Below are positions 8,110 through 53,761 of a stretch of 64,000 nt of DNA, piece by piece (positions within the stretch are counted from its first letter, which is position 1; the number at the start of each line of letters is the position of its first letter). The DNA is from Octopus sinensis (taxonomy: Eukaryota), in contig NW_021833250.1 in the NCBI RefSeq assembly GCF_006345805.1, positions 14,668 through 78,667 of the forward strand. Reading direction: 5' to 3'. Below the pieces are notes generated by a model. The model was given only the letters and a program-made list of their open reading frames with translations. It was not told where the DNA came from and ran no database searches. Position numbers and translations under genes: made by a program.

Positions 8110-10926
8110 TCATTTGGATTCATTTCCTTTTGGAAATTCATAAATTGTGTGAATAACTTTGTGTGACAGAGACGTATCAAAATGAAATTTAGCATTAATT
8201 TTCGACAATACATTAGGCATCCATGAAGTCATCAATATCAAAGCAATCCGTGCGAATGCTGATAGATCAAAATCCTTTCGATTTATTATGTTATTGCAAG
8301 CAAAGAAAAAAGATACGATTAAAAATAATTTTACAATGGCTTTACCAATCTCGTAACTCAAAGGAAAATACTCGTTAACGATTGCTTCAAACAATTTGGC
8401 ATCAATGTATTCCTCTTCATATTTTAACTGAACTAATTTTGGTTTTATAGTTTTGGTAAACATTATTGATTGAACTAGTATCCCTTTATAATGTTCCTGA
8501 ATAGCGTTCATAACTGTAAAAGCGTGAACGAAAAACATGGCAATAAGCCATATACCACCGACAGTATCAGGTTTAGCAAGCATTGCAATAGCTATTGAAA
8601 ATACATAAGTGCAAATGATTTGAAAACTCATAAGAAATACATAGCCTGAAGCAAATGCCCATAATATAAAAAACGGCAATGACGGCAATGATAAAATTTT
8701 ATCAGGACACTTGGAAGGATATATATTTTTCTTCATTAGAGGTAAAATATATTTTTTGAAATAACTTAATGGTAAAGTTAGAATCAAATATATGAATGGG
8801 ATTCCGTAATAAACGAGGCGGAGAAGTAATTCACAGATAAAAAATACAACAAATAAAATTGTAGCCAAAATAGGAAGCAAACATAATATAATTTTTATAA
8901 AAATATTACTCTTGCAGAAAATAGTCCACATTTTATGTATACGCGTAATCCACTTAACAAATATAGATTTCCAGAAATATGGGTCGGCAGCAATGAAAAC
9001 TTTAACTTTAATTATTGCAAGGAGTCGATCATAACCCTGAAGTGTAGAAAAAGAATCTTCTTTGAGTTTTGTATCTAATATACTTTCAGCGATAATCTCA
9101 CTTAAATGACTGGGAAGAACAAACAGGATAAAGTTAAAAATTATGTAGCTGATTATCCCCAAAAAGGGACCCCAAACAAAACAATCTGAAAGTTCATAGC
9201 TTTTCTGGATTCCTAGAATGAAGGAGCGATAACCCAATGGAATGCGATCATGTAAAAATATTGTCACCGTTTCATATAAAAATAAGTAATACATTAAAAG
9301 ATCTAGAAGAATTACTGAGAGAGAAAGCAAAATAAGAATACCTCTTCTTAGTCTTGAAACAAACAAAGTCGAATAATGAAAACAAAACAACCAATATAAA
9401 AAATGAGAGAAACTGTAAATATTATGTTGTATACTAATCCATTCTGATTTGTCTGGCAATGCGTATTTACATAGATATTCATTGTTAGGTAATTGTTGCT
9501 GGTGAGGTTCTAGGGAGTTTGGCGATGTGTCTTCATTTTGAGAATTTAATCTCTCGTTAGTTGACTGTTGCTGGTTAGGTTCTAGGGAATTCGGCGATGT
9601 GTCTTCATTTCGAGAATGCACTTCCTCGTTAATTGATGGTTGCTGGTTAGGTTCATTTGAATTTGGTGATGAGGGTAGAATTTCCAAATGCACTTCCTCG
9701 TTAGTTGATTGTTGATGGTTAGGTTCTAGGGAATTTGGTGATGAGGGTAGAATTTCCAAATGCACTTCCTCGTTAGTTGATTGTTGATGGTTAGGTTCTA
9801 GGGAATTTGGTGATGAGGGTAGAATTTCCAAATGCACTTCCTCGTTAGTTGATTGTTGATGGTTAGGTTCTAGGGAATTTGGTGATGAGGGTAGAATTTC
9901 CAAATGCACTTCCTCGTTAGTTGATTGTTGATGGTTAGGTTCTAGGGAATTTGGTGATGAGGGTAGAATTTCCAAATGCACTTCCTCGTTAGTTGATTGT
10001 TGATGGTTAGGTTCTAGGGAATTTGGTGATGAGGGTAGAGTTTCCAAATGCACTTCCTCGTTAGTTGATTGTTGCTGGTTAGGTTCATTTGAATTTGGTG
10101 ATGAGGGTAGAATATCCAAATGCACCTCCGCGTTACCTGATTGTGGCTGGTTGCAGGAATACGGAGGTAATTTAGCTTTTGATATAAACCTGATATACAA
10201 TGGAAATATGGCCAACAGAACTGCTCCAACAACATTTGCACAATTGACAAACATACTGTTTTCAATGGTATTTCCAGAACAAATGGATTTTGGTTCATAA
10301 GTAGTATTATCATTTTTATGTAGTTCACAACAATAATTCTTCAGTATCTCACGATAAATACCCAATATTCTGTACGCTAATAACGTATAAGGACTGTTCT
10401 TCTGCATGTCGTGCGACAAATTTATAAAGAAACACATATATCCAGATTCTCCCATCTGCGATTCATTGATAAATACGATTCTCTTTAATTCCTCGAAAAT
10501 CGAATATATTACATCGTATCGCTGAACATTTTGTTTTCCACAATTCATATCGATATCAATACTTGGAGTAGCAATGTAAGCGTCTAATATATTAAATGAG
10601 CGAATTGAAAAGTCAAAGAGGACATTTTTATACATTACTAAACCATCTGGTTTATCTGGAATCCATGTGAAACGTCTCGCATTTGCAAAATAATCTAGTG
10701 GCACAGGATTGAGAAGGCCATCAATTTTTTTATCAATTATATGGACTTCAAAATTGAAAACTTGTTTGCCTGATCTTACTAGACGAGTTAAATTTTTAAT
10801 GACAGTGGGAGAAATTTCAGTTGTACAATTATTTCTGTGTTCTTTTGCATATGTGTTTAGTGATGTGAGAGAAATAATAAGGATGACTGATAAAAGAGGT
10901 GCTGTTACCATCTGCATGACAGCCAT
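8110..10926 (-). CDS. Uncharacterised multi-pass membrane protein, paralog 1 (938 aa), CDS in one exon
   Basis: Uninterrupted 938-codon ORF in DNA otherwise full of stops. Hydrophobic N-terminal signal, Cys-containing ectodomain, many hydrophobic helices. Colinear with the ORF at 51551-53761. Confidence 0.9.
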   Translation of the reverse strand: MAVMQMVTAPLLSVILIISLTSLNTYAKEHRNNCTTEISPTVIKNLTRLVRSGKQVFNFEVHIIDKKIDGLLNPVPLDYFANARRFTWIPDKPDGLVMYKNVLFDFSIRSFNILDAYIATPSIDIDMNCGKQNVQRYDVIYSIFEELKRIVFINESQMGESGYMCFFINLSHDMQKNSPYTLLAYRILGIYREILKNYCCELHKNDNTTYEPKSICSGNTIENSMFVNCANVVGAVLLAIFPLYIRFISKAKLPPYSCNQPQSGNAEVHLDILPSSPNSNEPNQQQSTNEEVHLETLPSSPNSLEPNHQQSTNEEVHLEILPSSPNSLEPNHQQSTNEEVHLEILPSSPNSLEPNHQQSTNEEVHLEILPSSPNSLEPNHQQSTNEEVHLEILPSSPNSLEPNHQQSTNEEVHLEILPSSPNSNEPNQQPSINEEVHSRNEDTSPNSLEPNQQQSTNERLNSQNEDTSPNSLEPHQQQLPNNEYLCKYALPDKSEWISIQHNIYSFSHFLYWLFCFHYSTLFVSRLRRGILILLSLSVILLDLLMYYLFLYETVTIFLHDRIPLGYRSFILGIQKSYELSDCFVWGPFLGIISYIIFNFILFVLPSHLSEIIAESILDTKLKEDSFSTLQGYDRLLAIIKVKVFIAADPYFWKSIFVKWITRIHKMWTIFCKSNIFIKIILCLLPILATILFVVFFICELLLRLVYYGIPFIYLILTLPLSYFKKYILPLMKKNIYPSKCPDKILSLPSLPFFILWAFASGYVFLMSFQIICTYVFSIAIAMLAKPDTVGGIWLIAMFFVHAFTVMNAIQEHYKGILVQSIMFTKTIKPKLVQLKYEEEYIDAKLFEAIVNEYFPLSYEIGKAIVKLFLIVSFFFACNNIINRKDFDLSAFARIALILMTSWMPNVLSKINAKFHFDTSLSHKVIHTIYEFPKGNESK
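9481..10128 (-). repeat. Coding minisatellite, 9 x 72 bp (24 aa: EVHLEILPSSPNSLEPNHQQSTNE)
   Basis: Period 72 read directly (atttggtgat at 9661 and 9733). Four central units encode identical peptides. Confidence 0.95.
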
Positions 10927-11177
10927 GTTTCGTTTTCTGTAATAAAGAAAAATTGAACATATAAATTAATGGAGGTTTAATTTCATTTTCCTTATTCCGT
11001 AACTATTTAGAATGGAAAATATTTATTCAAAACTAAAGGTAACTGTCTTGTAGCTTGTTTAGTTTTGTTTATTCTTTAATCATGCTTTCGTTCATAGTCA
11101 TACTGTGTATATTTTCATATCAATCTCTTGACACTTCCTCTTGAAATTTTTATTGTGATTTCTTTGAGTGCAAAAAA

Positions 11178-16962: not shown

Positions 16963-17407
16963 TAATTCAAGATTTTAAATTTGAGAGCAGCACTGCAAAA
17001 ATTAAACATGCCTTATCTGACCAGGCGACATCAGACAACATACATCTAACGACCAGTACTTCCGAATTCAAACAGAATTATGCTCATAATTATAAAATTG
17101 TATGTATCGAAACATTTGTAACGATTAAAAAGTTGCCTAACCATACTTACTCTTCCTTTTGACTCTTTTAATTTTTACTTACTCTTCCTTTTGACTCTTT
17201 TAATTTTTACTTTATATATATATATCTCATGGTGCGATACGAACACTTAACGTGGTTTTTGTAGTCAGAGTTTCGACTGCTATTTCGGCATGTTGGTGTC
17301 TCTTAGACACCCTCATTTTTAATTGTTAAAAATTATTACCTTTGTACGGTATTTTTCCCATGCTGGCCACTTGATAATATGGATACTTAAATATCGATAT
17401 TATCCTC

Positions 17408-17515
<108 letters not shown>

Positions 17516-17645
17516 CTTAGTTGGAAAAGGATGCGTGGCGTTCGATCATAGAATAATATAAATAATATATAAATATATGCATATATACATATAGATATAT
17601 GTACATACCTACACACACACACATACACACACACACACACACACA

Positions 17646-17757
<112 letters not shown>

Positions 17758-18986
17758 CATATATGGGTACAAGACATAAAAAAACGTAGACAATGAGAAA
17801 CGAAAACATTAAAAACAAAAACACAGAAAACGAACTTTTTTCGAACAACGAAAAAAAAAACAAACAGAGAAACGAGACATGCAGCATAAAGAACATTCTC
17901 TTCATAAGTTGTCCCCCGTTTAATCTACTCCGCGTTGCGAAGGTAAGGACAATACGCAACTTCGTTAAAACAGTCCTTCCCGCAAAGCAAATTAATTGAA
18001 ATTTGAGATTTTTTGCGGAAGGTGAAAGTGGTAAAAAAAACAGGACAGTGAGAACAAGACAGTAAAAACAAAAAGTGAGGGCTATTAAGCCAAGACGATG
18101 TGAAGATTATGAACGCTAGAAAAACGAAGTTTGAGAAGAGACAGGTAAAAGCACGACTTGTCTTTAGGAAGGAAGTGGAAGAAAGATAGATGGCCTTTCG
18201 TCATGTGTCAGCGACGTGAGAGTCAAGGAGGAAGAGTGAGATAGAGAGAGAGGGAACGGTGAAGGGGAGAGGAGAAGAGTAGGGAAAGGGTGGGAGAGAA
18301 AAACAGAAAAGAAGAACAAGAGAGGGAGATAGATAGACAGCGAAGAGATAGAATAAGAGTGCGCGTCATAATTATTAAGATAAAACTTATTTGGAAAAGG
18401 ATGTGTGGCGTTCGTTCATATAATAATATAAATAATATATAAATATATGCATATATGCATACATATATGTACATACCTACATATATATGTATATATACAT
18501 GCATATATGGATACAGGAAATCAAAAAAGCGTAGACACAATGAGAAACGAAAACATAAAACAAAAACAGAAAACAAACTTTTTTTCGAACAACAAAAAAC
18601 AAACAAACAGAGAAACGAGACATGCAAAATAAGTTTTCCCCTGTTTTGTCTACTCCGCGTTTCGAAAGTAAGGACAATACGCGCCTTGGTTAGAACAATC
18701 CTTCCTGCAAAGCATCGTCTTGGTTTAACAACCGTCACGTTTGCTTTTACTGTCTTGTTCTCACTGTCCTGTTTTTGTTACCACTTTCGCTCTCCACAAT
18801 AAAACCCAAATTTTATTTAATTTGCTTTTTTTACCTGTTCAAAGTATGTTTTTACCTTTTCATATTATATTCGCTATCTGTTATCTTCTTCTTCTTCTTC
18901 TTCTTCTTCTTCTTCTTCTTCTTCTTCTTCTTCTTCTTCTTCTTCTTCTCACTGCTATTACTCTTATTATTGTTATTATTATTATT

Positions 18987-24446: not shown

Positions 24447-26672
24447 CTATGCACAGTAGTTAAAAGCGATGGAATAATTTCTGGAATATTGGAATAGTTT
24501 CAGTTTTCGAAAAATATTATTGATTTCATAACTTGCTCTCGGATTCATTTCATTTTCCAAATGTTTTGTTTCAATAACATTGTCTAACAGAGGTTTCTTA
24601 AAAGGAAATTTAGTAGTAATTTTCGACAAAAATTTAGGTATCGCAGAAGTCACCAACATCAAGGCAATCCGTGTGAATGTTGATAGACCCAAATCCTTTC
24701 GACTTATTATGTTATTGCAAGCAAAGATAAAAAGATACGATTAGAAATAGTTTTACAATGGATTTACCAATCTCGTGTCTCAAAGGACAGTGTTTGTTAA
24801 CGATTACTTTAAACAACTTGGCTTTAATGAATTCCTCTCCACATATTGACAGAACTAAATCTGGGTGAACAGGTTTGGTTAACTGTATAAATTCAACAAG
24901 AAATACGTAGCTTGAATAAAATGCCCATGCTATATGAATTAGCAATGACATCAACGATAAAATTACAATAACACACTTGAAAATATGACTACGTTTCTCA
25001 TAGAGAGGTAAAATATACATTTTGAAATAACTTAATGGTAAAGTTAGAATCAAATATACGAAGGGGATTCCGTAATAAACGAGACACAGAAGAAATTCGC
25101 AGATAGAAAATACAGCAAATAAAATCACAATAAAAGGAAAAAAATATAAATTTTGGAACATTTTTATCCCATTTTTTTTATACGTTTAATCCAAGTACTA
25201 AATAGTAAGTACCAGAAATCTGGGTTTGCAGCAACAGAAATATTAGCTTTCATTATTGCAAGGAGTCGATCATAATCCTGAAGTGCAGTAACATTCAAAT
25301 TACCATACTCCATTAAAATTTTTTTATCTTTAATGAGAAATGTGCAAGTGGATTCTTGATATAATGCATTATAAGCAATAGCGTCACTTACACGACTGAG
25401 AAGAACTAAGAGAATAAAGTTAACAATTATGTAACTGATTATCCCAACAATAGGATTCAAAACAAAACTACCTGAAAGTTCATTACCTTTCGGGATTCCT
25501 AGAATGGAGGAGCGATAACCCAACGGAATACGATCGTGTGAAAATATTGTCAACGTTTCATATAAAAATAAGTAATACAGTAATAGATCCAGGAGAATTT
25601 CTGAGAGAGAAAGCAGAATAAGAAAGCCTCTTCTTAGTCTTGAAACAACAGTAGTCGAATAATGAAAGCAAAATAACCACGATGAAAAAATGAGAAAAAC
25701 TGCAAATATCATGTTTTACACAAATCCATTCCGATTTGTCTGGCAATGTGTGTTCAATTGTAAATTCATCGTGATGTAATTGTTGCTTGTTAGATTCAGG
25801 GGAATCTGGCGATGCCTGTTCAATTGACAAGACGACTTCCTCGTCAGCTGATTGTTGCTGGTTAGGTTCACTGGAATTTGGCGATGTGTTTTTAGTTGGC
25901 AAAGAGTGGTTAGCTGATAGTGGTAATTTAGCTTCTGATACAAAACTGATGAATAATGGAAATATAACCCACAGAACTGCTCCAACAATATTTGCACAAT
26001 TGTCAAACATACTATTTTCAATGATATTTCCAGAACAAATGGATTTCGATTCGTAAGTGTGCTTATCATTTTCATGTAGTTCACAGCAATGGTTCTTCAG
26101 TATCTCTCGATTTATACCCAATCTTCTCTATGTTGATAACGTAGAAAGGCTGTTATTCCTCAAGCGACGCGACAAATTTATAAAAAAACACATATATCCA
26201 GATTCTCCCATCTGCAAGTTATCGATAACTACGATTCTCTTTAATTCTTCGAAAATCAAACTTACCGAATCGTATCTCCGAATATTTTGTTTTCCACAAT
26301 TTATATCGACAACAATATTTAGAGAAGCAATGTAAAAGTCTAATATATTAAATTAATGAACTGAAAAATCAAAGAGGACATTTTTATACATTACTAAACC
26401 ATCTGGTTTATCTGGAATCCACATGAAATGCCTCGCATTTGCAAAATAATCCAGTGGTACAGGATTGAGAAGATCATCGAGCTTTTTATCAGCTATATGG
26501 ACTTCAAAATTGAAAACCAGTTTGCCTGATTTTACTAACCGAGTTAAATTTTGACTGACATTAGGAGAAATTTTAATTTCACAATTATTTTCGAGGTTTT
26601 CCGCTTGTATGTTAATGATTGATGTCAGTGAGATAATAATGGTGATTGATAAAAGAAGTGCTTTTACAATAT
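24447..26672 (-). pseudogene. Pseudogene of the multi-pass membrane protein (paralog 2)
   Basis: Translation HIVKALLLSITIIISL...PDKPDGLVMYKNVLFDFSVH*...LST*RRLGINREILKNHCCELH matches paralogs 1 and 3. It has two in-frame stops (~26354, ~26129), several frameshifts, an internal deletion near 24900, and no start codon. Confidence 0.9.
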
Positions 26673-37790: not shown

Positions 37791-38139
37791 TAATAATAGT
37801 AATATTAATAATGATAATAATAATGATTTCTTTTATTTGCCACCAGGGAGAAGGATGAAGGGGACAATACTATTACAGACATAATGTGTGGGGGCTTACC
37901 TACAATGAAATGATAATAATAATAAATAATAATAGGGTAAAGACCTCCCTTTGATTATGGATCACTATGGAATTGCACCTAGAAATTTTACCTCCGAGGC
38001 ACCTTCGGGCAAGGTTGTTTATTGAAGAACAGCGGTCTCCCATGCATATCAGTCTCTCATCTCCATGCCACAGATGTTTTAAAACTATATGCTGCAAATG
38101 ATAACCAGCTGGAAACATTACTACAGACGAAGATTTCAA

Positions 38140-40975
38140 CGATTCTATGTGGGGAAAAGATTAGAAAATGACAACATTCCCATAAAAAGCTTACTTGGCA
38201 AGATGGTATTCAACACCAAATTCAGTTACTTAAGTCTGACATAGAATGTTGAAAAACCTTAAGTTTGACAAGACTATCAAACCAACAGAAATCTGAAAAT
38301 TAAAGAAAATATATAATATGAAAACTATACTTGACATCGATACCACCATAGAAACTATCAAGCAAAAGGTATGTGCAAAAGCTGCCCGCATACAGGAACA
38401 TAGGGAAAATACCAGTTACAGTAAAGTCTATCCATCAAAAGAAGTGCAGGAATTTTGGAATAAAATTTGTGCAGAAGGAAAAACACACAATAAAAAGGCC
38501 TATTGGATTGATAGAATAACTACTGACTTAGACAGACTCCTTAAAAGAGCAAAAGTGGGAGGGTATCACGGTAGAGGATGTAAGCAAGGAGAAGTCTCTA
38601 GGAAAGAATAAAATTCTTAACTTCTGGTTGAATGCCTTCCTAGAGAGTCATGAACTGCTAAAAAAAACTTTACAACAATGTTTTGCAACAACCTAGTATG
38701 ATTCCCTCTTGGCTAGTTAATGGTTAAACTTTCCTACTTCCAAAAAATGAAGAAACAAATGAACCAAAAAATTATAGACCTATAACCTGCTTAACAACAA
38801 TGTATAAAATACTAACATCTGTTTTGACTGAATATACCTATAGTTTTTAATAGAAAGTGGCATATTCCCTAATGAGAAAAAAGGATGTAAACGTGGGTCT
38901 TGTGGTTGTAAAGATCAGCTACTCATCAATAAGATGATCTTGGAAGATTCTCACAAACGACACAAAAACTTGTCGATAGCCTTGATAGACTATAAAAAAG
39001 CTTTTGATATTCTGTCACATAAGTGGATTAAGAAATGTCTGGAAATGTATAAAATAGCACCTACTCTGCGAAACTTCTTGTCTGTAAGTATGAGATCATA
39101 GAGAACCACATTGACTTCGAACAGTGACAATGAATCTCTCAATGCTGGAGATGTAAGCATTTCTTATGGCATTTTCCAGGGTGACTATCTATCCCTGCCC
39201 TTCTTTTGTCTAGCCTTAATACCTCTCTTGAAATTGCTCGATGATGTATAATATGGCTATAAAATGATTTCAAGCTCTTTGCAAAATACGACCAAAAAAC
39301 ACAGGGTTTACCAACAATTGTTAAAAAATTCAGTGATGATATCAGAGTGCAATTTGGCCTCGATAAATGTGCAAAAGCTACTGTTATCAAAGGAAAAATA
39401 ATAGAAATACCAAACATTAATCTTGACCAAGAGTATGTTATAACGGAGTTAGAACCAGCGGAGAGCTACAAATTGCTAGGGGTATTTGAAGGTGATAGAA
39501 TCAAACATTCAATGATGAAGGAAAGGATCAGAAGAGAATTTTATAGCAGAGTAAGGTCAATACTCAAGACAGAGCTGAATGCAAGAAACATGATCAAAAC
39601 GATCAATACTTTAGCCATACCAGTCGTGATTTACAGCTTCAATATCATTAACTGGTCAGATATATATACGAAAATAGTTGACAATACATAGAATGCACCA
39701 CCCTAAGGCAGATATAGAACGACTTTACCTGCCAAGAAAAGAGGGTGACCGTGGACTTTTACAACTGGAATTAACAATGAAAATTGCCACAGTTAGTCTA
39801 AACACCTACCTGAAAAACTCTGATGACTGGTTGTTAAAACTTGTCTTAAAGCACGAAAACAAGAAACCATTATACTCAGTAAAAAAGCAGGCAAAGAAAT
39901 ATCTAAGTGAATTCCAAATACAACAAATCCCAGAATTAAACGTACTAGAAACACGCACAGAAAAAGCTAAGAGTATGAAAACCCGTGTTAAAACTGCTGC
40001 CTAAGATATTCTTACTGATAATTGGCAAGAAAAACATCTCAATGACAAATACCTAAAGAGAGCTAATAATGTCGATGTTGACAATACCCTTACCCGTCAA
40101 TGGTTTGTGTCTTCTGGCTTAAAATCAGGAACTGAAGGGTTTATCCATGGCAGCCGAAGATCAATGCCTACCTACAAGGAGGTACCAGGCCTAAATATTA
40201 AAGACTGACAGTAGCCCAACATGTCGTGTATGTAAACAAAATGAAACCATTGATCATATTGTCTCCATGTGTAGTCTTCTTGTGCCTACAGAGTATCTCA
40301 ACAGGCATGATAGAGCAGCACAATATATTCATTGGGTAATTTGCAAAAACCTGGACCTGCTCCATAATGAAAAATAGTGGAACACAAACCACCTACAGTG
40401 CTTGAAAATGACTACATTTCACTCCTCTGAAACTTCACCATTCAAACTGACAGAAAGATAGATGCGAAGAGGCAAGACATTATATTGAAGGACTTCAGAC
40501 AAAAATCATACCTCCTAACTGATATGACTGTCCCAATCGACATAAATATATTTGTCAAGACCTACCAAAAACTGAGCAAGTATAAAGATCTTGAAACAGA
40601 AATTGGCAAAATGTGTAACCTCAAGACTTATACAGTATCTGTAGTCAAGGTGCCCTAAGAATGATAGCAAAATGGCTGATTCCTACCTTGCTCAGATACC
40701 AGGAAACCCCAAAATAGCAGAAATTCAAACGGTAGTGCTCATGGGAACTGCCCATATCCTACGTAAAATACTGTCTACGTAATCTCAAATCTTAAAACGA
40801 ACTTATAATTTTCTTATGTTTTTTTAAAACATTCTCTAGAACAATATGTGCAAAACCAAGTATATAGCACCTTAGGCATAAACACCAATTTGAACTTCTA
40901 ACTTGTTGTCTATTGAAGTCTCTGGGTGAGACTTGGAGTCACCTTGTACGAATACAAAGCAAATGTCAAACATAT
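38140..40975 (+). mobile_element. R4/Dong-clade LINE (subfamily B), 5'-truncated and degenerate, with RT and RLE region and own 3' UTR
   Basis: MHHPKADIERLYLPRKEGDRGL, HFPG/QGD region, KYKDL...VP; ends in (TAA)n at 40975-41125. Confidence 0.8.
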
Positions 40976-40999
40976 AATAATAATAATAATAATGATAAT

Positions 41000-41081
<82 letters not shown>

Positions 41082-41083
41082 TA

Positions 41084-41125
<42 letters not shown>

Positions 41126-44100
41126 GAGAGAACACCGGGGGACGTTTAGGATGTAAGAAGGAAAAAACAGAGTTCCGAAATCTATCCACAAACATCAAAA
41201 ACAAGGATATCGTATGGAGCCAAAGATTTACTAACAAAGGATTGGACTGTATCCGAGTAAGTAATACTAATTGAAATTTATTACTATTTTCGAAACGAAA
41301 TGTTGTATTTTGACTCGATATCATCTCCACCTCTAACAAAACACATGTAAACATGCGTGAAGCATTACGATCCATCAACACCAGATCATCCCCGACCCCA
41401 AACACCATGTACAAAGGAACTACGAAGAAATTAAATACCACCGATATTATTCAACCCAAGAATAACAATCGAGCGGTACGTACTTTAAACTTACAACAAA
41501 AAATGTACGAAAAACTACACGTGCGAAATAATGTGACAACAGAAATGAACGGACCGGTACCCTACGAAAATGACGACCGTCAAAATGATGGGCCGGACGT
41601 TGTTCCTCATGTCCCGCAAATAAAACCCAAAAGACATAAATGGACACGTGAGGAATACATTTCCATCTTACACGCATACTTCACAGCAGTGCTCTACCCA
41701 AAAAATTAAAACACAACAACACATACATATAACATATGGAAGGAAAACAACATAAATATAGACTTGGATACAGCAATGAACCCTAATAAATTAGCTAACG
41801 TACGAAGATACATTCTCAACGCAAAAAAAATATCAGAAATAGAAATAGAACATCTAAAAGAAAAAAACACCACGAAAATGTAGATAGAAGCCACACAACA
41901 ATACCCAATAATATAAACACTGAAATAGTAAAACACGAAGACAAACGAAACATTCCCAACAAACACGATGTAAGCAACGAAGGGGAGCCTAATGATTATG
42001 ATAATATAAAAAGTAAAATAATCAAAGAACTGAAAACCACAGAGCTCAAAATGGACCACCGACCATACCTCCCAAGAATCAAAATAGACGAAGCAACACC
42101 AATTATAACAGCATAAACCTAGCCGTCACGGAACTAATAGCCACTGAAACAAAAAGCGATATCACTGAGTTAAATGACTTAGTATACGCAGTAGCCACTG
42201 AAGCCACAAAAGAAGCTGGATACTCACTCAAACCCATCCAAACAGGAGTACCACCACCCAAAAAAACACTCTGGATAAATAACATCCAAAACAAAATACA
42301 AAAAATGAGAAAAGATCTGTCGATTCTTAATGAAATCAGCACACAATCAACGCTACTGAGCAACAAAAAGAAAACAAAAATACTCCGCAAATATAACATC
42401 ACAGAAAAAGATTTACCTGAGATAAAAGAAAAGCTGAAGCAAGATATCCTTGCCAAAGCACAAAGAATCCGCCGGTACGAGAAACGCCAGCGCTTCTTTG
42501 AACAAAACAAAAAGTTCAACTCCAACCCCAAAAAGTTCTACCAAGAACTTGGCAAAAATAAAATAGAAATCACTGCAGCACCAACGGCAGAAGAAGTGGA
42601 AGAATTCTGGAGAGAAATATGGTCGGCGAACGAACAACCAAAAGAAAGGAGTATCAAAATAACAGACTCGGCATCTGAACAACTTTGGACCCCCATAACA
42701 ACTGAAGAGGTCACCCAGGCACTGCAAATACTAAGCAACTGGAAGGCACCTGGGCATGACAATATCCCCAACTTCTGGTTGAAATATCTAACAGGAATGC
42801 ACAAAAAGCTGGCTGAAAACTTTAACAATATGCTAGCAGAGCCAGAGACAATGCTTGAATGGCTCACGAAGGGGAAAACCATCTTAATTCCCAAATCAAA
42901 TGAGACAGCAAAACCAGAAAACTACAGACCAATAACCTGTCTCCCTACAATGTTCAAGGCATTTACTACAGTGATATCGCAAAGGTTGAACAAGCACCTG
43001 GACGAAAACAAACTGTTCCCAGAAGAGCAGAAAGGATGACGCAAAGGCTCATATGGCTGTAAAGATCAACTAATGATTAATAAAGCCATAACTGAAGACA
43101 GCCACAGAAAGAAGAAAGGCCTCAGTATGGCCTGGATCGACTACAAAAAAGTGTTTGATAGCATCCCCCACACATGGATCCTCGAAACACTAGCCATTAA
43201 CAAAGTAGCACCAACAATCATAAAATTCATAGAGCACTCTATGAATAAATGGCAAACAGTGCTACAGCTCCAAACAAAAGAGGGACTCATGAAAACCAAA
43301 GACATCCCCATTAGAAGAGGAATATTCCAGGGAGACACGCTCTCTCCACTCCTTTTCTGCTTGGCACTGTCACCCTTATCTGATATGCTAAATAGAACTG
43401 GATGCGGATATAAATGTTACGGCAAAACGATCAGCCACCTTTTATATATGGATGACCTAAAACTATACGCTGCAAATGACAAACAGCTGGAAACACAATT
43501 AAAGACAGTTCATGGATTTACCAAAGAAATAGATATGAAATATGGATTAGAAAAATGCGCCAAAGTAACCATGAAAAGAGGAAAACTAGTTAAGAGTAGC
43601 AACATCACACTAGATAAACCCAATGAAATAAAAGAATTAGACCAAAGCCAAACTTACAAATACTTAGGAATCCATGAACTAGATAAGACACAACACACAC
43701 AAATGAAAGAGAAAATAAAAAAGAATATTATAGACGAGTTAGATCAATACTAAAAACAGAGCTCAATGCTAAAAACAAGATAATAGGTATCAACACTTTA
43801 GCTGTCCCAGTTATAAGTTACAGCTACAATATCCTTAACTGGACACTAAATGAACTGACCAAAATAGATAGGAAAACAAGAAAAATAATGACAGGATCTA
43901 GGATGCATCACCCAAAATCTGACATAGAAAGACTATATATACAACGTATAGAAGGTGGTAGAGGCCTTATACAACTGGAAAACTACTATAAAATAACCAC
44001 CATAGGATTGCAAAAATATCTACTTCAGAAAGAAGGAAAACTGATACAAATAGCGGCAAAACACGAGCGAAACAAAAAACTGTTCTCAGTATTTAAGGAA

Positions 44101-45229
44101 GCTGACAAATACAAACAAGAAATCATACCACCTAATAAATATGAAGAAGAAGAAGAAGAAGAAGAAGAAGAAGAAGAAGAAGAAGAAGAAAAAGAAGAAG
44201 AAGAAGAAGAAGAAAAAGAAGAAGAAGAAGAAGAAGAAGAGAAGAAGAAGAGAAGAAGAAGAAGAAGAAGAAGAAGAAGAAGAAGAAGAAGAAGAAGAAG
44301 AAACAACAAAAGCTATAAAACAAATGAAATCCAAACTAAAAATAGAACAACAATGAACCATGATAAAACGATGGCAAGAAAAGCCCCTTCATGTAAATAC
44401 TGGACTAAACTAAACGCAAAAGAAATAGACAAAGAAAAATCCCAGCAATGGTTGAGAAGCTCAGGACTCAAAGCAGAAACAGAGGGCTTTTTAATTGCAG
44501 CACAAGACCAAAGCCTCCCCACCAGAAATTACCAAAAACATGTAATGAAAAGAAATATTACAAGTAACTGCAGAATATGTGGAGATGGACGAGAAACAAT
44601 AAATCATATTATCTCTAGCTGCCCAGTCCTGGCTAAGAAGGAATATATTCACAGACATGACAGAGTTGGAACCTACATACATTGGAAGCTATGCCAACAT
44701 TATGGAATAACAACAGAAAAAAGATGGTATAGGCACACACCAGAAAAGGTCACAGAAAACGAGAAAGCAACCATACTCTGGGATATGCCGATACACACAG
44801 ATAGAGAAATTAAGGCCAACAGACCAGATATAGTTGTCAAAGATCATGAAGAAAAAAATGCTTTCTAATTGATGTATCAATAACGGCTGATGATAACGTG
44901 CCTCTAAAAGAAATGGAGAAACTCTCAAAATACAAAGGCCTGGAAATAGAGGTAACCAGAATGTGGAATCTAAAAACAGAAACAATTCCTATCATAGTAG
45001 GTGCAGTAGGCATGATAAAAAAAATATTCAGATAAATACATAACAAAAACACCAGGACTTACAAACACATATAACATGCAGAAAATTGCACTACTAGGCA
45101 CTGCACACATCCTACGCAGAACACTTTCCATACAATAACCATCAGAGCATCACAACAAATCACAGCACATACCCAAGGCACACAGAGCTGTGCTCGGTAG
45201 TGAAGTGAAAGCACGCTATAAAACTACTG
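41126..45229 (+). mobile_element. Near-full-length R4/Dong-clade LINE (subfamily C): RT + CCHC finger + restriction-like endonuclease, disabled
   Basis: WKAPGHD, YRPITCL, IDYKKVFDS, IFQGDTLSP, LYMDD, CRICG...H...C and RPDIVV...LIDV...KYK. In-frame TGA at 43037, frameshifts, (GAA)n expansion 44143-44301; (TAA)n on both sides. Confidence 0.9.
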
Positions 45230-45255
45230 AATAATAATAATAATAATAATAATAG

Positions 45256-45304
<49 letters not shown>

Positions 45305-45329
45305 TAACAATAACAATAATAATAATAAT

Positions 45330-46215
45330 CATGTACATTGTTTTGTCTTGGTATAAAAGATGGGCTACAGCAAATATTCTGCTCAATACCACAGATTTGC
45401 TTGTCAGTTGTTTGACTTTAACCAGTTGAGCATGTTCCTTAGTGGCTGACGATATGTGCATCTCTGATCACGAGCAGAAGTAGTGGGGGAGCATCATAGC
45501 CATGTGTTGAGAGGGATTCTTTGGGGTTTGAATAATTCACCTCTGAAAACATAGGTGGTTCTTTCAACATCCTTAAACAACCCTTATTCAGGGACCTTTT
45601 GAGCGGGATGGGCTACTCAACCTGAAGAAAATTCTAACTGGGCCCCACCTGCAAGGTCATGTGCTGTTTATCTTGATATGAGATCACCATGTCGCGCACA
45701 TATGGTTGTGATGCATGTGCCTGGTGTACCCTTATCAGACGGGTAGTCATGATGGGTATATTGGGCTTCGTATATTTTACCCCAGTGTCACTTTGATGGC
45801 ATTAACTGCTCTCTCACTCAATAATAATAAAAATAATAATAATAATAATGATAATAATAATAATAATAATAATAATAATTGGGGGAGCATCATAGCCATG
45901 TGTTGAAAGGGATTCTTTGGAGTTTGAATAATTCACCTCTGGAAACATGGGTGTTTCCTTAAACATCCTAAAGCAACCCTTATTCAGGGACCTTTTGAGC
46001 AGGATGGGCTACACGACCTGAAGAAAGTTCTAACTGGGTCCCACCTGCAAGGTCATGTGCTGTTTATCTTGATATGAGATCACAATGTCGCGCACATATG
46101 GTTGTGATGCATGTGCCTGGTGTACTCTTATCAGACGAGTAGTCATGATGGGTATATTGGGCTTCGTATATTTTACCCCAGTGTCACTTTGATGGCATGA
46201 ACTGCTCTCTCACTC
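45330..46215 (+). mobile_element. Two TAA-tailed non-coding retroposon copies (45330-45819; 45881-46215, 5'-truncated)
   Basis: Identical 3' ends followed by (AAT)n. The second copy starts internally at gggggagcatc. Confidence 0.8.
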
Positions 46216-46267
<52 letters not shown>

Positions 46268-46340
46268 TAATAATAATATAATAATAATAATAATAACAAT
46301 AACAATAACAATAACAATAATAATAATAATAATAATAATA

Positions 46341-46422
<82 letters not shown>

Positions 46423-46424
46423 TA

Positions 46425-48151
46425 TGCTTGGCACTGTCACCTCTATCTGATATGCTAAATAGAACTGGATGCGGATATAAATGTTACGGCAAAACGATCA
46501 GCCACCTTTTATATATGGATGACCTAAAACTATACGCTGCAAATGACAAACAGCTGGAAACACTATTAAAGACAGTTCATGGATTTACCAAAGAAATAGA
46601 TATGAAATTTGGATTAGAAAAATGCGCCAAAGTAACCATGAAAAGAGGAAAACTAGTTAAGAGTAACAACATCACACTAGATAAAACCAATGAAATAAAA
46701 GAATTAGACCAAAGCCAAACTTACAAATACTTAGGAATCCATGAACTAGATAAGACACAACACACACAAATGAAAGAGAAAATAAAAAAAGAATATTATA
46801 GACGAGTTATATCAATACTAAAAACAGAGCTCAATGCTAAAAACAAGATAATAGGTATCAACACTTTAGCTGTCCCAGTTATAAGTTACAGCTACAATAT
46901 CCTTAACTGGAAACGAAATGAACTGTCCAAAATAGATAGGAAAACAAGAAAAATACTGACAGGATCTAGGATGCATCACCCAAAATCTGACATAGAAAGA
47001 CTATATATACAACGTATAGAAGGTGGTAGAGGCCTTATACAGCTGGAAAACTACTATAAAATAACCACCATAGGACTGCAAAAATACCTACTTCAGAAGG
47101 AAGGAAAACTGATCCAGATAGCAGCAAAACACGAGCAAAACAAAAAACTGTTCTCAGTATTTAAGGAAGCTGACAAATACAAACAAGAAATCATACCACC
47201 TAATAAACACAAAGAAGAAGAAGAAGATGATGAAGAAACAACAAAAGCTATAAAACAAATGAAATCCAAACTAAAAATAGAACAGCAACGAGCCATGATA
47301 AAACGATGGCAAGAAAAGCCCCTTCATGGTAAATACTGCACTAAACTAAACGCAAAAGAAATAGACAAAGAAAAATCCCAGCAATGGTTGAGAAGCTCAG
47401 GACTCAAAGCAGAAACAGAGGGATTTTTAATTGCAGCACAAGACCAAAGCCTCCCCACCAGAAATTACCAAAAACATGTAATGAAAAGAAATATTACAAG
47501 TAACTGCAGAATATGTGGAGATGGACAAGAAACAATAAATCATATTATCTCTAGCTGCCAGTCCTGGCTAAGAAGGAATATATTCACAGACATGACAGAG
47601 TTGGAACCTACATACATTGGAAGCTATGCCAACATTATGGAATAACAACAGAAAAAAGATGGTATAGGCACACACCAGAAAAGGTCACATACTCTGGGAT
47701 ATGCCGATACAAACAGATAGAGAAATTAAGGCCAACAGACCAGATATAGTTGTCAGAGATCATGAAGAAAAAAAATGCTTTCTAATTGATGTATCAATAC
47801 CGGCAGATGACAACGTGTCTCTAAAAGAAATGGAGAAACTCTCAAAATACAAAGACCTGGAAATAGAGATAACTAGAATGTGGAACCTGAAAACAGAAAC
47901 AATTCCTATCATAGTAGGTGCAGTAGGCATGATAAAAAAATATTCAGACAAATACATAACAAAAACACCAGGACTTACAAACACATATAACATACAGAAA
48001 ATTGCACTACTAGGCACTGCACACATCCTACGCAGAACACTTTCCATACAATAACCATCAGAGCATCACAACAAATCACAGCACATACCCAAGGCACACA
48101 GAGCTGCGCTCGGTAGTGAAGTGAAAGCACGCTATAAAAATAAAACTACTG
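46425..48151 (+). mobile_element. 5'-truncated copy of the subfamily C Dong-type LINE
   Basis: Nearly identical to 43360-45229. Begins directly in (TAA)n and ends ...aaaactactg(aac)(aat)n. Has a ~20-bp deletion near 47690. Confidence 0.9.
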
Positions 48152-49480: not shown

Positions 49481-49673
49481 AATATCGCAAATATCACGGA
49501 AAAATTTTAACGGCATCTAATTTTCAGTATCTGATCTCCTTTCTCTGAAGTGTATCCTTGTTACTCATATTTAATACACACAACAAAACGTCTAAGTTGC
49601 TGTTTCTGGAGATGTCTGAATGAGACTTGGAACAGCTCTTACAAAATAAATCAACAACAACAACAACGAAAAC

Positions 49674-49753
<80 letters not shown>

Positions 49754-50789
49754 AAGAAGAAGAAGAACAAGAAGAACAAGAAGAACAAGAAGGAGGAGGA
49801 GGAGGAGGAGAAGAAGAAGAAGAGAAGAAGAAGAAGAAGAAGAAGAAGAAGAAGAAGAAGAAGAAGAAGAAGAAGAAGAAGAAGAAGAAGAAGAAGAAAG
49901 AAGAAGAAGAAGAAGAAGAAGAAGAAGAAGAAGAAGAAAAGAAGAAGAAGAAGAAGAAGAAGAAGAAGAAGAAGAAAGAAGAAGAAGAAGAAGAAGAATA
50001 TTTATTTATGAACGACAAGAACTGAAAGAAATACAACAAAATTCAAAGAAGTTCAAAAGATGAAAGACAAAAATTACAATAATGTTTTCATCTAAAGTTT
50101 AAAAGTCTTCTTGTGTTGATTAGGGTACACCATGTTTCTGATTAGGTATCTCCACAATTGTATTGTTAATATCTGTAGATTCCAGCACCTTCGGTGAGGA
50201 ACTCTTGGGTTACAGTAGACAATCGAGGTCGCACGTCATGTTTTATCTAAAACCAATCTTACTTCTTTGTCCATATGTACCTTAAGCAGTATATTATATC
50301 GTTGTTAGCCTTACGAAAGAATATGTATTTCATTTTGTTCAGGATGGTAGCTATTTCCTTCATATTGAGATGAGCAGTTTGTCAGCAGGGAGTTTCTTCT
50401 TTTCCACAGGTTATGAAACTACACTTTATCTCATTAATTTTATTTATTTATATTGCATTGGGTCTTTCGAAGAAGTGTGCATAAGTCGTTTGGTCTGCAT
50501 CAGGTCACCAGACTCTTAAGTACATGGCCATATGCTGCTGTGAAGGAGTGCTTCTCGGTCGCTTCTCTTTTGTTATTGTAGTTGTTGTTAGAAGTGATTG
50601 GTTTTTGTCCACGTCAGGGCCAAAGAGTTTGATCGTGACAGTGAGAATTATGTAAATTTGTTTGTCGAATCATGGGTTATAGCTATTGTGGAGTTTTGGA
50701 CGGCAACCTCCATGCTTTGTAGTCTTGTTTCTGGATTTTTCTTTAATATTTTCTTTTTTGTTTTTGACTGCTGGTCTTGATTCCGCGAT

Positions 50790-51393: not shown

Positions 51394-51550
51394 CTGTGTG
51401 CGTGCACGCGCGCGCGTGTGGTGTGTGAAGGTGATGGCTGTATGTGTGTGAGTGTGTGGACTAATGACACTTATTAAGATAGTTAAAGATACTTAAAAGA
51501 GATTATTTTGGGAGAAAGCAAACATTTTGTAAATTGCTCTATGAAATATT

Positions 51551-53761
51551 TCATTCTTCAAATACATTAATTATCCCAATGATTTTATCTGATAGGGATA
51601 TATCAAAATGAAATTTAATATTGAATATCGATAATAATTTTGGTATCATAGACGTCATCAATATTAAGGTAATCCGTGTGAATCCTGATAAATCCAAATC
51701 CTTTCGACTTATTATATTGTTGCAAGCAAAGAAAAAAGATACGATTAGAAATAGCTTTACAATGGATTTAGCAATCTCGTATCTCAAAGGAAAATGATGG
51801 TCAATAATTGTTTTAAACAACTTGACATTAATGAATTCCTGTCCATATTTTGACAGAACTAAATTTGGACGAACACTTTTCGTAAACTTTATAGTTTGAA
51901 CTAGTATAGTATGATACTTTTCCTGAATAGTTTTCGTAACTGCAAAACCGTAAACAAAAAACATGGCAACAAACCATATATCGCCAACAGTATCAGGTTT
52001 AGCAAGCATTACAATAGCTATTGAAAATGAATAGTTGCAAAGAACTTGGAAAGTTGTAAGAAAAATATAAATCGAATCTAAATACCATAATACATAAAAG
52101 GGCAACGAAGCGAATGTTAAGATAAGATCAATAATCTTGGAAATATGGTTAGGATTCAAATACATTGGTAAAATATAGACTTTGAAGTAACTTAAGGGTA
52201 AAGTTAGAATCAAATAAACGATTGGGATTCCGTAATAAACGAGGCACAGAAGTAATTCGCAGATAGAAAATACAGCAAATAAAATCGTGATCGTAATAAA
52301 TAACCAAAGAAATATGAATTGGCTAAAAATATTTCTCTCGTAGAAATAAAGACAAATTTTCTTTATACGTTTAATCCAAGTATAAATAATTAAATACCAC
52401 AAATTTGGGTTTAAAGCCGTAGAAATATTAGCTATCATTATCGTATAAAGTAGATCGTAATCTTCAAGTGTAGAAATATTAAAATTTCCATAGTTCTCTA
52501 TTAATGTGATATTTTGAATGAGAAATGTGCAAGTTGATCTTTGATGTAATGTACTATAAATGATAGTCTCACTTAAACGACTGGGAAGAACGAAGAGAAT
52601 AAAGTTGAGAAATATATAGATAATTATCCAAAAAAATGGACCCCCGAAAAAACCATCTGTATTTTCATAGCTTTCTGAGGTTCCTAGAATCATGGCACAA
52701 TAACCCAATGGAATACGATCATGTAAAAGTATTTTCATCGTTTCATATAAAAATAAATAATGCATTAAAAGATCCAGGAACATTATTGAAAGAGGAAACA
52801 TAATAAAAATGAATCTTCTTAGTTTTGAAGCAAAGAAAGTGGAATGGTGAAAACAAAATAACCAAGATAGAAAATGAGAGAAAGTGTAAATATTATGTTT
52901 TTCATTGATCCATTCTAATTTGTGTGGCAATGTGTAGTTAATTCTAAATAAGAATTCATCGTTAGCTAATTGTTGCTGGTTAAGTTCTCGAGAATATGAA
53001 GGTAATTTAAGTTTTGATACAAAACTAACAAGCAATGGAAATATGGCCCACAGAACCGCCCCAACAATATTTTCATAATTAACAAACATACTATTTTCAA
53101 TGATGTTTCCAGAACAAATGGATTTCGGTTCATAAGTGCGTTTTTCATTCTTATGTAGTTCACAGCAATAGTTTTTCAGTATCTCTCGATTTATACCCAA
53201 TCTTCTGTATGTTATTAACGTATAAGGGCTGTTCTTCTGTATATCATGCGACAAATTTATAAAAAAGCACATGTATCCAGATTCTCCCATTTGCAATTTA
53301 TCGATAAATACGATTCTCTTTAATTCCTCGAAAATAAAAAATATTACATCGTGTCTCTGAATATTTTGTTTCCCACAATTTATATCGATAACAATACTTG
53401 GAGTAGCAACGTAAACATCTAATATATTAAATGAATGAATTGAGAAGTCATAGTGAAAATTTTTATACGCTACTAAACCATCTGGTTTATCTGGAATCCA
53501 TATGAAATGCCTCGCATTTGCATAATAATCCAGTGGTACAGGATTGAGAAGCCCATCCAGTGTTTTATCAGCTATATGGACTTCGAAATTGAAAACCAGT
53601 TTACCTGATTTTACTAAACGAGTTAAAGTTTGACTGACATTAGGAGAAATTTTAATTTCACAATTATTTCCGAGTCCTTTCGCATCTATGTTTAGTGATG
53701 TAAGTGAGATAATAAGGGTCATTGATAAAAGAAGTGCTGTTACCATATGCATGACAGCCAT
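51551..53761 (-). CDS. Uncharacterised multi-pass membrane protein, paralog 3 (736 aa), CDS in one exon
   Basis: Intact ORF colinear with 8110-10926 (shared LLNPVPLDY, WIPDKPDGLV, QMGESGYMCFFINLSHD, KNYCCELHK, MLAKPDTVG, KLFLIVSFFFACNNII). Lacks the 24-aa repeat array. Confidence 0.9.
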   Translation of the reverse strand: MAVMHMVTALLLSMTLIISLTSLNIDAKGLGNNCEIKISPNVSQTLTRLVKSGKLVFNFEVHIADKTLDGLLNPVPLDYYANARHFIWIPDKPDGLVAYKNFHYDFSIHSFNILDVYVATPSIVIDINCGKQNIQRHDVIFFIFEELKRIVFIDKLQMGESGYMCFFINLSHDIQKNSPYTLITYRRLGINREILKNYCCELHKNEKRTYEPKSICSGNIIENSMFVNYENIVGAVLWAIFPLLVSFVSKLKLPSYSRELNQQQLANDEFLFRINYTLPHKLEWINEKHNIYTFSHFLSWLFCFHHSTFFASKLRRFIFIMFPLSIMFLDLLMHYLFLYETMKILLHDRIPLGYCAMILGTSESYENTDGFFGGPFFWIIIYIFLNFILFVLPSRLSETIIYSTLHQRSTCTFLIQNITLIENYGNFNISTLEDYDLLYTIMIANISTALNPNLWYLIIYTWIKRIKKICLYFYERNIFSQFIFLWLFITITILFAVFSICELLLCLVYYGIPIVYLILTLPLSYFKVYILPMYLNPNHISKIIDLILTFASLPFYVLWYLDSIYIFLTTFQVLCNYSFSIAIVMLAKPDTVGDIWFVAMFFVYGFAVTKTIQEKYHTILVQTIKFTKSVRPNLVLSKYGQEFINVKLFKTIIDHHFPLRYEIAKSIVKLFLIVSFFFACNNIISRKDLDLSGFTRITLILMTSMIPKLLSIFNIKFHFDISLSDKIIGIINVFEE

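What the first reader, a model, noticed from the sequence alone, without database searches (positions are those of the whole stretch)
8110..53761. Tandem family of orphan multi-pass membrane proteins undergoing birth and death
Seen: three colinear paralogs on the same strand (two intact, one pseudogene). Each has a signal peptide, a ~200-aa ectodomain with conserved Cys (NNC, INCG, YMCFF, YCCELH, SICSG) and ~9-11 hydrophobic helices. I recognise no family: the pattern is not that of a GPCR, Cys-loop receptor or protocadherin. Inference: clustered genes with intronless CDS, rapid turnover and a ligand-sized ectodomain are typical of sensory or immune-recognition receptors. This could be an undescribed receptor or channel family.
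Basis: partly seen in the sequence, partly recalled or inferred. Interest (0 to 1): 0.8.

Follow-up and report, generated by a model that had tools for sequence, protein, structure and literature searches.

The report
Undescribed lophotrochozoan nine-pass membrane glycoprotein family
Three neighbouring octopus genes (two intact, one dead) belong to an uncharacterised family of membrane glycoproteins found across molluscs, brachiopods and annelids, with no detectable relative in Pfam or among solved structures; its function is unknown.

Summary
The window is 100% identical to part of Octopus sinensis scaffold VCDQ01000806.1. It carries three colinear paralogs on the minus strand. A (8110-10926, 938 aa) and C (51551-53761, 736 aa) are intact. 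B (about 24567-26670) is dead: no ATG, two stops, three frame changes and a 150-bp deletion.

"Orphan" is only half right. No Pfam family or solved structure matches, and the UniRef name "STRA6" on two octopus relatives failed every test. But exhaustive phmmer finds 91 clusters of colinear homologs of about 750-850 aa. Named members come from cephalopods, bivalves, a gastropod, a brachiopod and an annelid.

Family members share six ectodomain cysteines, a GGP motif, an FW motif and a glutamate in TM4. An AlphaFold model (pLDDT 83.9, pTM 0.80) has no Foldseek match in the PDB.

Charge and glycosylation-sequon distribution suggest an N-out, nine-TM, C-in topology. C is under purifying selection (dN/dS about 0.3) and its ectodomain is not hypervariable. 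That fits a diversified recognition repertoire poorly.

The single-exon coding sequence is shared with Mytilus and other cephalopod-clade members. Function (receptor, channel or transporter) and expression remain untested.

The parts
51551..53761 (-). Gene C: intact single-exon CDS, 736 aa. Domains in window coordinates: signal peptide 53681-53761; ectodomain 53090-53680; TM1 53015-53089; variable linker 52886-53014; 8-helix membrane core 51623-52885; C-tail and stop 51551-51622.
   Evidence: ORF. Purifying selection: dN/dS 0.35 against O. bimaculoides P0001 and 0.31 against O. sinensis P0003. AF2 model pLDDT 83.9, pTM 0.80. No exactly matching product on record.
53762..53800 (-). 5' flank of C: polypyrimidine tract plus ACAG, ending 10 nt upstream of the ATG, with an in-frame TAA in between. 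Likely a 3' splice acceptor for an upstream, probably non-coding, exon.
   Evidence: Alignment of the 5' flanks of A and C. The O. vulgaris model P0019 starts to align 12 nt upstream of the ATG.
8110..10926 (-). Gene A: intact 938-aa ORF, equal to O. sinensis LOC118761507. Same architecture as C, with a repeat-expanded linker after TM1.
   Evidence: ORF. Identical to P0014 apart from a 97-aa stretch that the RefSeq model splices out. 70%/58% identity to C. Membrane-core dN/dS against C is 0.65. All 8 nucleotide differences from the O. vulgaris ortholog are nonsynonymous.
9553..10152 (-). 72-bp x 8.3 tandem repeat inside gene A. It encodes 24-aa S/P/N/E/Q-rich repeats in the predicted cytosolic linker between TM1 and TM2.
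   Evidence: TRF, 93% matches. Protein length differs between O. sinensis (938 aa) and O. vulgaris (914 aa). The chromosomal allele is out of frame here.
10927..10965 (-). 5' flank of A with the same polypyrimidine tract and ACAG acceptor 10 nt upstream of the ATG.
   Evidence: The O. vulgaris model P0018 aligns from 10938.
8592..8882 (-). In-frame 291-nt GT..AG segment that the RefSeq model of A removes as an intron. It encodes most of TM4 to TM7, including the conserved CExxL...YYGxP motif.
   Evidence: Exact reconstruction of P0014 from the window CDS. The O. vulgaris model P0018 resumes at the same position, 8592. Whether the splice is real is unknown.
24567..26670 (-). Pseudogene B. Start codon deleted; stops at 26353-26355 and 26128-26130; frame changes near 25688-25712, 25165-25182 and 24727-24731; a 150-bp deletion at about 24889-24896 relative to O. 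vulgaris.
   Evidence: tblastn. 5' alignment. Comparison with O. vulgaris L008, which has the same two stops but retains the 150 bp. Closest intact relative is O. bimaculoides P0009, 75.7%.

Best explanation
A, B and C are a tandem array from an octopod-specific expansion of an old, undescribed protein family. Named members come from molluscs, a brachiopod and an annelid.

Architecture (shown or predicted):
- a signal peptide;
- an alpha/beta ectodomain of about 195 aa, rich in N-glycosylation sequons, with six family-wide conserved cysteines, inferred to form three disulfides;
- TM1;
- a poorly conserved, low-confidence linker, probably cytosolic, which is where the 24-aa repeats expand;
- an eight-helix membrane core with a near-invariant glutamate in TM4 (CExxL...YYGxP), GGP before TM3, an NPxFW..R juxtamembrane helix and several invariant prolines;
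- a C-tail, probably cytosolic.

The overall topology is inferred to be N-out, nine TM, C-in. The coding sequence sits on one exon and is probably preceded by an upstream exon.

C is a functional gene under purifying selection. A is intact but evolves faster and may be under relaxed constraint. B died before the O. sinensis / O. vulgaris split.

Mechanism (inferred, about 0.3 probability): a cell-surface glycoprotein whose conserved ectodomain binds a conserved extracellular partner. It would pass a signal or a hydrophobic or small substrate through a largely apolar membrane core in which E502 is the only conserved charge. This points to a receptor-transporter or receptor-channel rather than one member of a diversified ligand-recognition repertoire.

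The confidence of 0.6 covers the statement as a whole: identity, family membership and evolutionary history stand at about 0.85, the mechanism at about 0.3.
For: - Paralogy and the lesions in B.
- Source and synteny: the window is 100% identical to O. sinensis VCDQ01000806.1. It is about 98% colinear with O. sinensis chromosome CM016863.1 and 97-99% colinear with O. vulgaris OX597818.1.
- Family breadth: 91 representatives at 50% clustering with E<=1e-3, and 48 with E<=1e-10, mostly 750-850 aa and colinear. Named members are Mytilus, Mizuhopecten, Mya, Sinanodonta, Haliotis, Lingula and Owenia.
- Conserved residues among the 60 non-octopod sequences: C34, C129, C165, C199, C200, C216, GGP 373-375, P393, FW 454-455, R465, E502, P513, P589, Y604, Y616, P658, P707.
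- Structure: AF2 with the 69-sequence alignment gives pLDDT 83.9 and pTM 0.80, with an alpha/beta ectodomain and a helical core.
- Topology: the ectodomain has 4.3 sequons per 195 aa against at most 0.4 in any other loop. L3 has net charge +5.7, and SRxxR precedes TM2.
- Selection: dN/dS is 0.26-0.41 in all domains for C against P0001 and P0003.
- Octopod paralogs form one clade nested in a cephalopod clade.
- Single-exon CDS in O. bimaculoides, O. sinensis, P0020, P0023 and Mytilus.
- A second copy lies 9 kb from P0003 in O. sinensis.
Against: - There is no expression evidence for A or C. The Logan contigs proved to be genomic, and no paper mentions any member.
- The nine-TM count rests on two AF2 helices of 49 and 42 residues each crossing the membrane once. 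Hydropathy alone would give ten spans.
- The mechanism is inference only. No ligand, partner, localisation or oligomeric state is known.
- A has membrane-core dN/dS 0.65 against C and differs from O. vulgaris A by 8 nonsynonymous and 0 synonymous changes. Its chromosomal allele is out of frame in the repeats. A may therefore not be functional.
- Foldseek was run on the whole multi-domain model and only against the PDB and a viral set. A domain-level or AlphaFold-DB match could still exist.
Confidence: 0.6

Rival explanations
1. The family is a very distant STRA6-type receptor-transporter for retinol or another lipid, as the UniRef name 'Receptor for retinol uptake STRA6' on O. bimaculoides P0001 and P0002 implies.
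For: The UniRef names. STRA6 has nine TM helices plus one intramembrane helix (PMC8006376), and nine TM helices is the count inferred here. The membrane core is largely apolar, which would suit a lipophilic substrate.
Against: - No member of 77 scanned hits PF14752, even at E<=10. A human STRA6 sequence scores 869 bits against PF14752 in the same library.
- Family profiles do not hit 5SY1, although STRA6 itself does at 2.6e-169.
- hhalign of the family profile against STRA6 and against a 20-sequence STRA6 alignment gives probability 0.2%.
- Foldseek against the PDB lists no STRA6 among its top 50 hits, and all TM-scores are about 0.1.
- True STRA6 proteins carry a precomputed PF14752 hit; the octopus proteins carry none.
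- Only two of the octopod paralogs bear the name.
- As recalled from the published structure (not tested here), STRA6 has no signal peptide or 200-aa Cys ectodomain.
Confidence: 0.06
2. This is a diversified chemosensory or immune-recognition receptor repertoire. Tandem birth-and-death would generate ectodomain variants that recognise different external ligands.
For: - Tandem arrays, pseudogenes and truncated copies.
- Independent lineage-specific expansions in octopods and bivalves.
- A single-exon CDS.
- A glycosylated, disulfide-bonded ectodomain.
Against: - The ectodomain is no more variable than the core: 66% paralog identity and dN/dS 0.26-0.33.
- Ectodomain motifs are conserved across phyla.
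- The repertoire is modest: nine annotated loci in O. sinensis.
- There are no tissue expression data.
Confidence: 0.2
3. The ORFs are not host genes of their own. They would be transposon- or virus-derived ORFs, or annotation artefacts, that merely look like membrane proteins.
For: The coding sequence is intronless and multicopy. Retrotransposon fragments lie between B and C.
Against: - Purifying selection.
- Conserved position between O. sinensis and O. vulgaris.
- Colinear homologs across three phyla with conserved Cys and Pro motifs.
- A confident AF2 fold.
- No match in the viral structure library.
- No RT, transposase or capsid domains in the ORFs.
Confidence: 0.03

Closest known systems
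STRA6 / RBP_receptor family (PF14752; zebrafish structure 5SY1)
   Same: Similar size (about 670 against 736 aa). Multi-pass with about nine TM helices. By recollection of the STRA6 structure, N-out and C-in as inferred here. A mostly hydrophobic core. Two octopus members carry this name in UniRef.
   Different: No similarity by sequence, profile, profile-profile or fold comparison (with positive controls). By recollection, STRA6 lacks the signal peptide and the six-Cys ectodomain. Calmodulin-binding helices and RBP binding were not assessable.
Tandemly arrayed, single-exon chemoreceptor gene families (for example the octopus GPCR expansions, PMC6408891; vertebrate odorant receptors, from general knowledge)
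   Same: The genomic behaviour is similar: clustered paralogs on one strand, a single coding exon, pseudogenes and lineage-specific expansion.
   Different: The protein is unrelated: nine rather than seven TM helices, a large ectodomain, and no 7tm Pfam hit. The ectodomain is not fast-evolving, and the copy number is about ten rather than hundreds.
Receptor-transporters with an N-terminal ectodomain fused to a multi-pass core (for example SID-1/SIDT). This is an analogy from general knowledge, not tested beyond the Pfam and Foldseek searches.
   Same: The overall logic is the same: signal peptide, glycosylated ectodomain, then a multi-helix core.
   Different: No Pfam hit to SID-1_RNA_chan or any other family. 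No Foldseek hit in the PDB.

Membership tests
STRA6 / RBP_receptor (PF14752) | Match to the Pfam PF14752 profile at the gathering score (25 bits) | tested here: not met
   No hit at E<=10 for A, C, six octopod relatives and 60 distant members. The control, human STRA6, scores 869 bits.
STRA6 / RBP_receptor (PF14752) | Detectable sequence or profile homology to solved STRA6 (5SY1) or to a STRA6 alignment | tested here: not met
   The profile searches with A1 and A2 against PDB sequences did not return STRA6, while the control returns it at 2.6e-169. hhalign probability is 0.2%.
STRA6 / RBP_receptor (PF14752) | STRA6 fold: nine TM helices plus one intramembrane helix forming a dimeric lipophilic cleft | tested here: not met
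   Foldseek of the pTM 0.80 model against the PDB gives a best E of 1.5 and TM-scores of about 0.1. No STRA6 is listed in the top 50. The helix count of about nine is similar, but that is not specific.
STRA6 / RBP_receptor (PF14752) | Calmodulin-binding C-terminal helices; binding of holo-RBP and retinol transport | not testable with these tools
   Needs biochemistry.
GPCR (7TM receptors) | Seven TM helices and a match to a 7tm Pfam family | tested here: not met
   Nine to ten hydrophobic helices. No Pfam hit.
Cys-loop ligand-gated channels (including octopus chemotactile receptors) | Neur_chan_LBD beta-sandwich ectodomain plus four TM helices | tested here: not met
   No Pfam hit. The ectodomain is mixed alpha/beta and is followed by nine helices. 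No PDB fold match.
Protocadherins | Cadherin repeats and a single TM helix | tested here: not met
   No Cadherin Pfam hit; the protein is multi-pass.
The undescribed family defined here (six-Cys ectodomain plus nine-TM core) | Colinear full-length similarity to the 69-sequence alignment, with the six ectodomain Cys, GGP, FW, R465, E502, P513, P589, P658 and P707 | tested here: met
   A and C carry all of these. B retains the motifs but is disrupted.

The most novel reading that the evidence does not exclude
These genes are members of a new structural class of lophotrochozoan cell-surface receptor-channel or receptor-transporter, with a fold absent from the PDB. Its octopod expansion would contribute to contact chemosensation or pathogen sensing, in parallel with the known Cys-loop-derived chemotactile receptors.
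Probability: 0.15. Interest if true: 0.8.

Novelty: categorically new. Interest (0 to 1): 0.5.

Why it matters
If the family is as isolated as these searches indicate, it is a conserved and evidently functional membrane-protein class. It is hundreds of millions of years old and has expanded repeatedly in molluscs, yet it has no name, no Pfam model, no structure and no literature.

It would be a concrete target for structure determination and for functional work in cephalopods and bivalves. It also exposes a misleading "STRA6" label in public databases, which could mislead work on retinoid biology in cephalopods.

The tandem birth-and-death pattern on its own is ordinary.

Tried and rejected
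- AF2 with only octopod sequences (alignment A1) gave pLDDT 38.7 and was discarded.
- Searching the word-indexed protein database with the broad alignment A2 returned only octopod proteins and added nothing.
- Pfam scans of A, C and 66 relatives gave no shared family.
- Profile searches against PDB sequences gave only noise, best E 0.17.
- Foldseek against the viral BFVD library found nothing.
- The STRA6 lead was tested with a validated control sequence and rejected.
- An internal-repeat search within the membrane core by hhalign of sub-alignments found none, with probability at most 1.2%. There is therefore no evidence for an inverted-repeat transporter design.
- Logan contigs were examined as possible transcripts. 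The Mytilus contig is colinear with the genome. The P0023-cluster contigs end in microsatellites. They are genomic DNA and not evidence of expression.
- Literature searches by LOC, UniProt and locus-tag identifiers returned no papers.
- An exact-product look-up of C found no record.
Full report
**1. What is in the window**

The window is AT-rich eukaryotic DNA with microsatellites and retrotransposon debris. Window 1-20926 is 100% identical to part of Octopus sinensis unplaced scaffold VCDQ01000806.1 of assembly GCA_006345805.1. The window is also about 98% identical and colinear with O. sinensis chromosome CM016863.1 at about 50.27 Mb. That makes it probably an alternative haplotype of that region. 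It is 97-99% identical and colinear with O. vulgaris chromosome OX597818.1.

**2. The observation**

Two long minus-strand ORFs sit at the ends of the stated range:
- A: 8110-10926, 938 aa.
- C: 51551-53761, 736 aa.

They are colinear paralogs, 70% identical over the first 298 residues and 58% over the rest.

tblastn finds a third colinear copy, B, at 26613-24573. B shows these lesions:
- in-frame stops at the equivalents of S110 and Y185;
- three frame changes;
- a missing stretch of about 50 residues in the membrane core;
- a deletion that has removed the ATG.

The O. vulgaris copy of B has the same two stops but still holds the 150 bp that the window lacks. B therefore died before the two species split and has kept decaying.

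The extra length of A comes from a 72-bp x 8.3 tandem repeat. It encodes 24-aa Ser/Pro/Asn/Glu/Gln-rich units just after TM1.

**3. The family is not an orphan**

The word-indexed search found only octopod relatives: Octopus bimaculoides, O. sinensis, O. vulgaris and Argonauta. Nine of these are full-length. The rest are shorter models of 376-629 aa or fusions.

The exhaustive phmmer search against 1.84 billion cluster representatives found 91 proteins at E<=1e-3 and 48 at E<=1e-10. Most are 750-850 aa, 21-27% identical, and aligned over nearly the whole length.

Cluster look-ups name the following as sources, all labelled "uncharacterized":
- Mytilus (four species);
- Mizuhopecten yessoensis, with two genes on one scaffold;
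- Mya arenaria;
- Sinanodonta woodiana;
- Haliotis asinina;
- the brachiopod Lingula anatina;
- the annelid Owenia fusiformis.

In a tree of 69 sequences the octopod paralogs form one clade inside a cephalopod-type clade. Bivalve sequences fall into several old subfamilies. Expansion has therefore happened independently in different lineages.

**4. Gene structure**

The coding sequence is an uninterrupted ORF in all of these:
- O. bimaculoides P0001 and O. sinensis P0003;
- the more distant P0020 and P0023;
- Mytilus.

The single-exon coding sequence is therefore seen in both bivalve and cephalopod-clade members.

A and C share a polypyrimidine tract plus ACAG that ends 10 nt before the ATG. 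C has an in-frame TAA in between. O. vulgaris gene models begin to align exactly there. I infer an upstream exon spliced onto one large coding exon.

**5. Protein anatomy**

Across the 60 non-octopod sequences the best-conserved positions, in C numbering, are:
- ectodomain: C34, W88, C129, C165, C199, C200, C216;
- membrane region: P242, R313/R316, GGP 373-375, P393, F454-W455, R465, E502, P513, P589, Y604, Y616, P658, P707.

AF2 with this deep alignment gives a confident model with mean pLDDT 83.9 and pTM 0.80. It shows an alpha/beta ectodomain (35-221) and TM1 (225-249). A low-confidence linker follows (254-282). The rest is a helical core that includes two very long helices (539-587 and 589-630).

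Three lines of evidence bear on topology:
- N-glycosylation sequons are concentrated in the N-terminal domain, at 4.3 per 195 aa against at most 0.4 in any other loop.
- The 392-477 loop has net charge +5.7.
- A conserved SRxxR motif precedes TM2.

Together with the AF2 helices this gives N-out, nine TM, C-in. Hydropathy alone would allow ten spans. The nine-TM count is an inference.

The membrane core has only one conserved charged residue, E502, and no conserved His, Asp or Ser set. It also has no detectable internal repeat.

**6. Comparison with known families**

There is no Pfam family for A, C, six octopod relatives or 60 distant members, even at E<=10. Profile searches against PDB sequences return only noise. 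Foldseek of the good model gives nothing better than E 1.5 and TM-score about 0.1 against 350,542 PDB chains. It also finds nothing in the viral library.

The only functional label in any database is the UniRef name "Receptor for retinol uptake STRA6" on two O. bimaculoides members. I tested it as follows:
It scores 869 bits on PF14752 and hits zebrafish STRA6 (5SY1) at 2.6e-169. The libraries can therefore detect STRA6.
- hhalign of the family profile against that sequence gives 0.2% probability.
- hhalign against a 20-species STRA6 alignment also gives 0.2% probability.
- True STRA6 proteins carry a precomputed PF14752 hit, and the octopus proteins do not.

The STRA6 name is unsupported. One caveat is that the STRA6 alignment is mammalian only and shallow.

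**7. Selection and turnover**

C against its closest annotated relatives gives dN/dS 0.35 (P0001) and 0.31 (P0003). No domain beyond the signal peptide exceeds 0.41, and the ectodomain gives 0.28-0.33. Among the eleven full-length octopod sequences of alignment A1 (C plus ten relatives), the ectodomain is 66% identical on average. That lies within the range of the membrane segments, 56-75%. This is purifying selection with no sign of an especially fast-evolving ligand-binding domain.

Synonymous divergence between C and P0001 is uneven, at 0.54 in the ectodomain against 0.21 in the core. This hints at gene conversion or a mosaic history.

A belongs with O. bimaculoides P0009 and pseudogene B in a faster-evolving subgroup with repeat-expanded linkers. 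Three observations raise doubt about A:
- Its core dN/dS against C is 0.65.
- All 8 differences from O. vulgaris A are nonsynonymous, although the number is too small for significance.
- The chromosomal allele is out of frame inside the repeat array, which is either a real lesion or an assembly error.

A may be under relaxed constraint.

**8. Interpretation**

Shown:
- A real tandem trio with one dead member.
- Membership in a wide, conserved, unnamed family.
- A confident predicted structure with no known relative.
- Purifying selection on C.

Inferred:
- Surface localisation.
- Three ectodomain disulfides.
- The nine-TM topology.
- An upstream exon.

Speculative (about 0.3): the conserved ectodomain binds a conserved extracellular partner, and the apolar core, with E502, transmits a signal or moves a hydrophobic or small substrate.

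Its genomic hallmarks are present but its evolutionary hallmark is not. Expression could not be tested. The candidate transcript contigs proved to be genomic, and no paper mentions any member.

**9. Verdict**

At the level of protein family, and probably of fold, this is new. At the level of genome dynamics it is ordinary. Interest is moderate (0.5). It would rise sharply with tissue-specific expression or a demonstrated conductance or transport activity.

Noticed in passing
window 8592-8882 (-): The RefSeq model of gene A (LOC118761507, 841 aa) removes an in-frame 291-nt GT..AG segment from an otherwise open ORF. This deletes most of TM4 to TM7, including the most conserved motif. The O. vulgaris model P0018 resumes at the same acceptor (8592).
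   Followed up: partly
L007:10001-12811 (O. sinensis chromosome CM016863.1): The chromosomal allele of gene A goes out of frame and back within the 72-bp repeat array. This is either a haplotype-specific disabling lesion or an assembly error in the repeat. Its membrane core also differs from the window allele at several residues.
   Followed up: partly
window 36702-47645 (+): Fragments of non-LTR retrotransposons (RVT_1 plus zf-RVT) lie between B and C. They include two related copies (43073-44868 and 46428-47645) and long poly-E/K/R low-complexity runs.
   Followed up: partly
window 51551-53761: Gene C is an intact 736-aa ORF under purifying selection. No gene with exactly this product is on record in the collection. 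It may be unannotated or modelled differently in O. sinensis.
   Followed up: partly
gene C against L003:10001-12244 (O. bimaculoides P0001): Synonymous divergence is uneven along the gene: dS 0.54 in the ectodomain against 0.21 in the membrane core. This suggests gene conversion or recombination among paralogs.
   Followed up: no
P0001 and P0002 (UniRef entries for O. bimaculoides): The automatic name 'Receptor for retinol uptake STRA6' is not supported by the Pfam, PDB profile, hhalign or Foldseek tests. It looks like an annotation error that could propagate.
   Followed up: yes
window 30494-31642: This 1.1-kb stretch is 93.8% identical to sequence about 5 kb downstream of another family member (P0003) on a different O. 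sinensis chromosome (L002:16996-18151). It is probably a young interspersed repeat.
   Followed up: no
L003:1-7460 and P0019: A gelsolin gene lies upstream of the O. bimaculoides relative P0001. In O. vulgaris a gene model (P0019) fuses gelsolin domains to a family member through the acceptor just upstream of the ATG. This is either a read-through transcript or a merged annotation.
   Followed up: no
window 17326-17793 and 49524-50039: The long 'ORFs' here are artefacts of microsatellite and homopolymer-type repeats (poly-YI, poly-F/S, poly-K/R translations), not genes.
   Followed up: no
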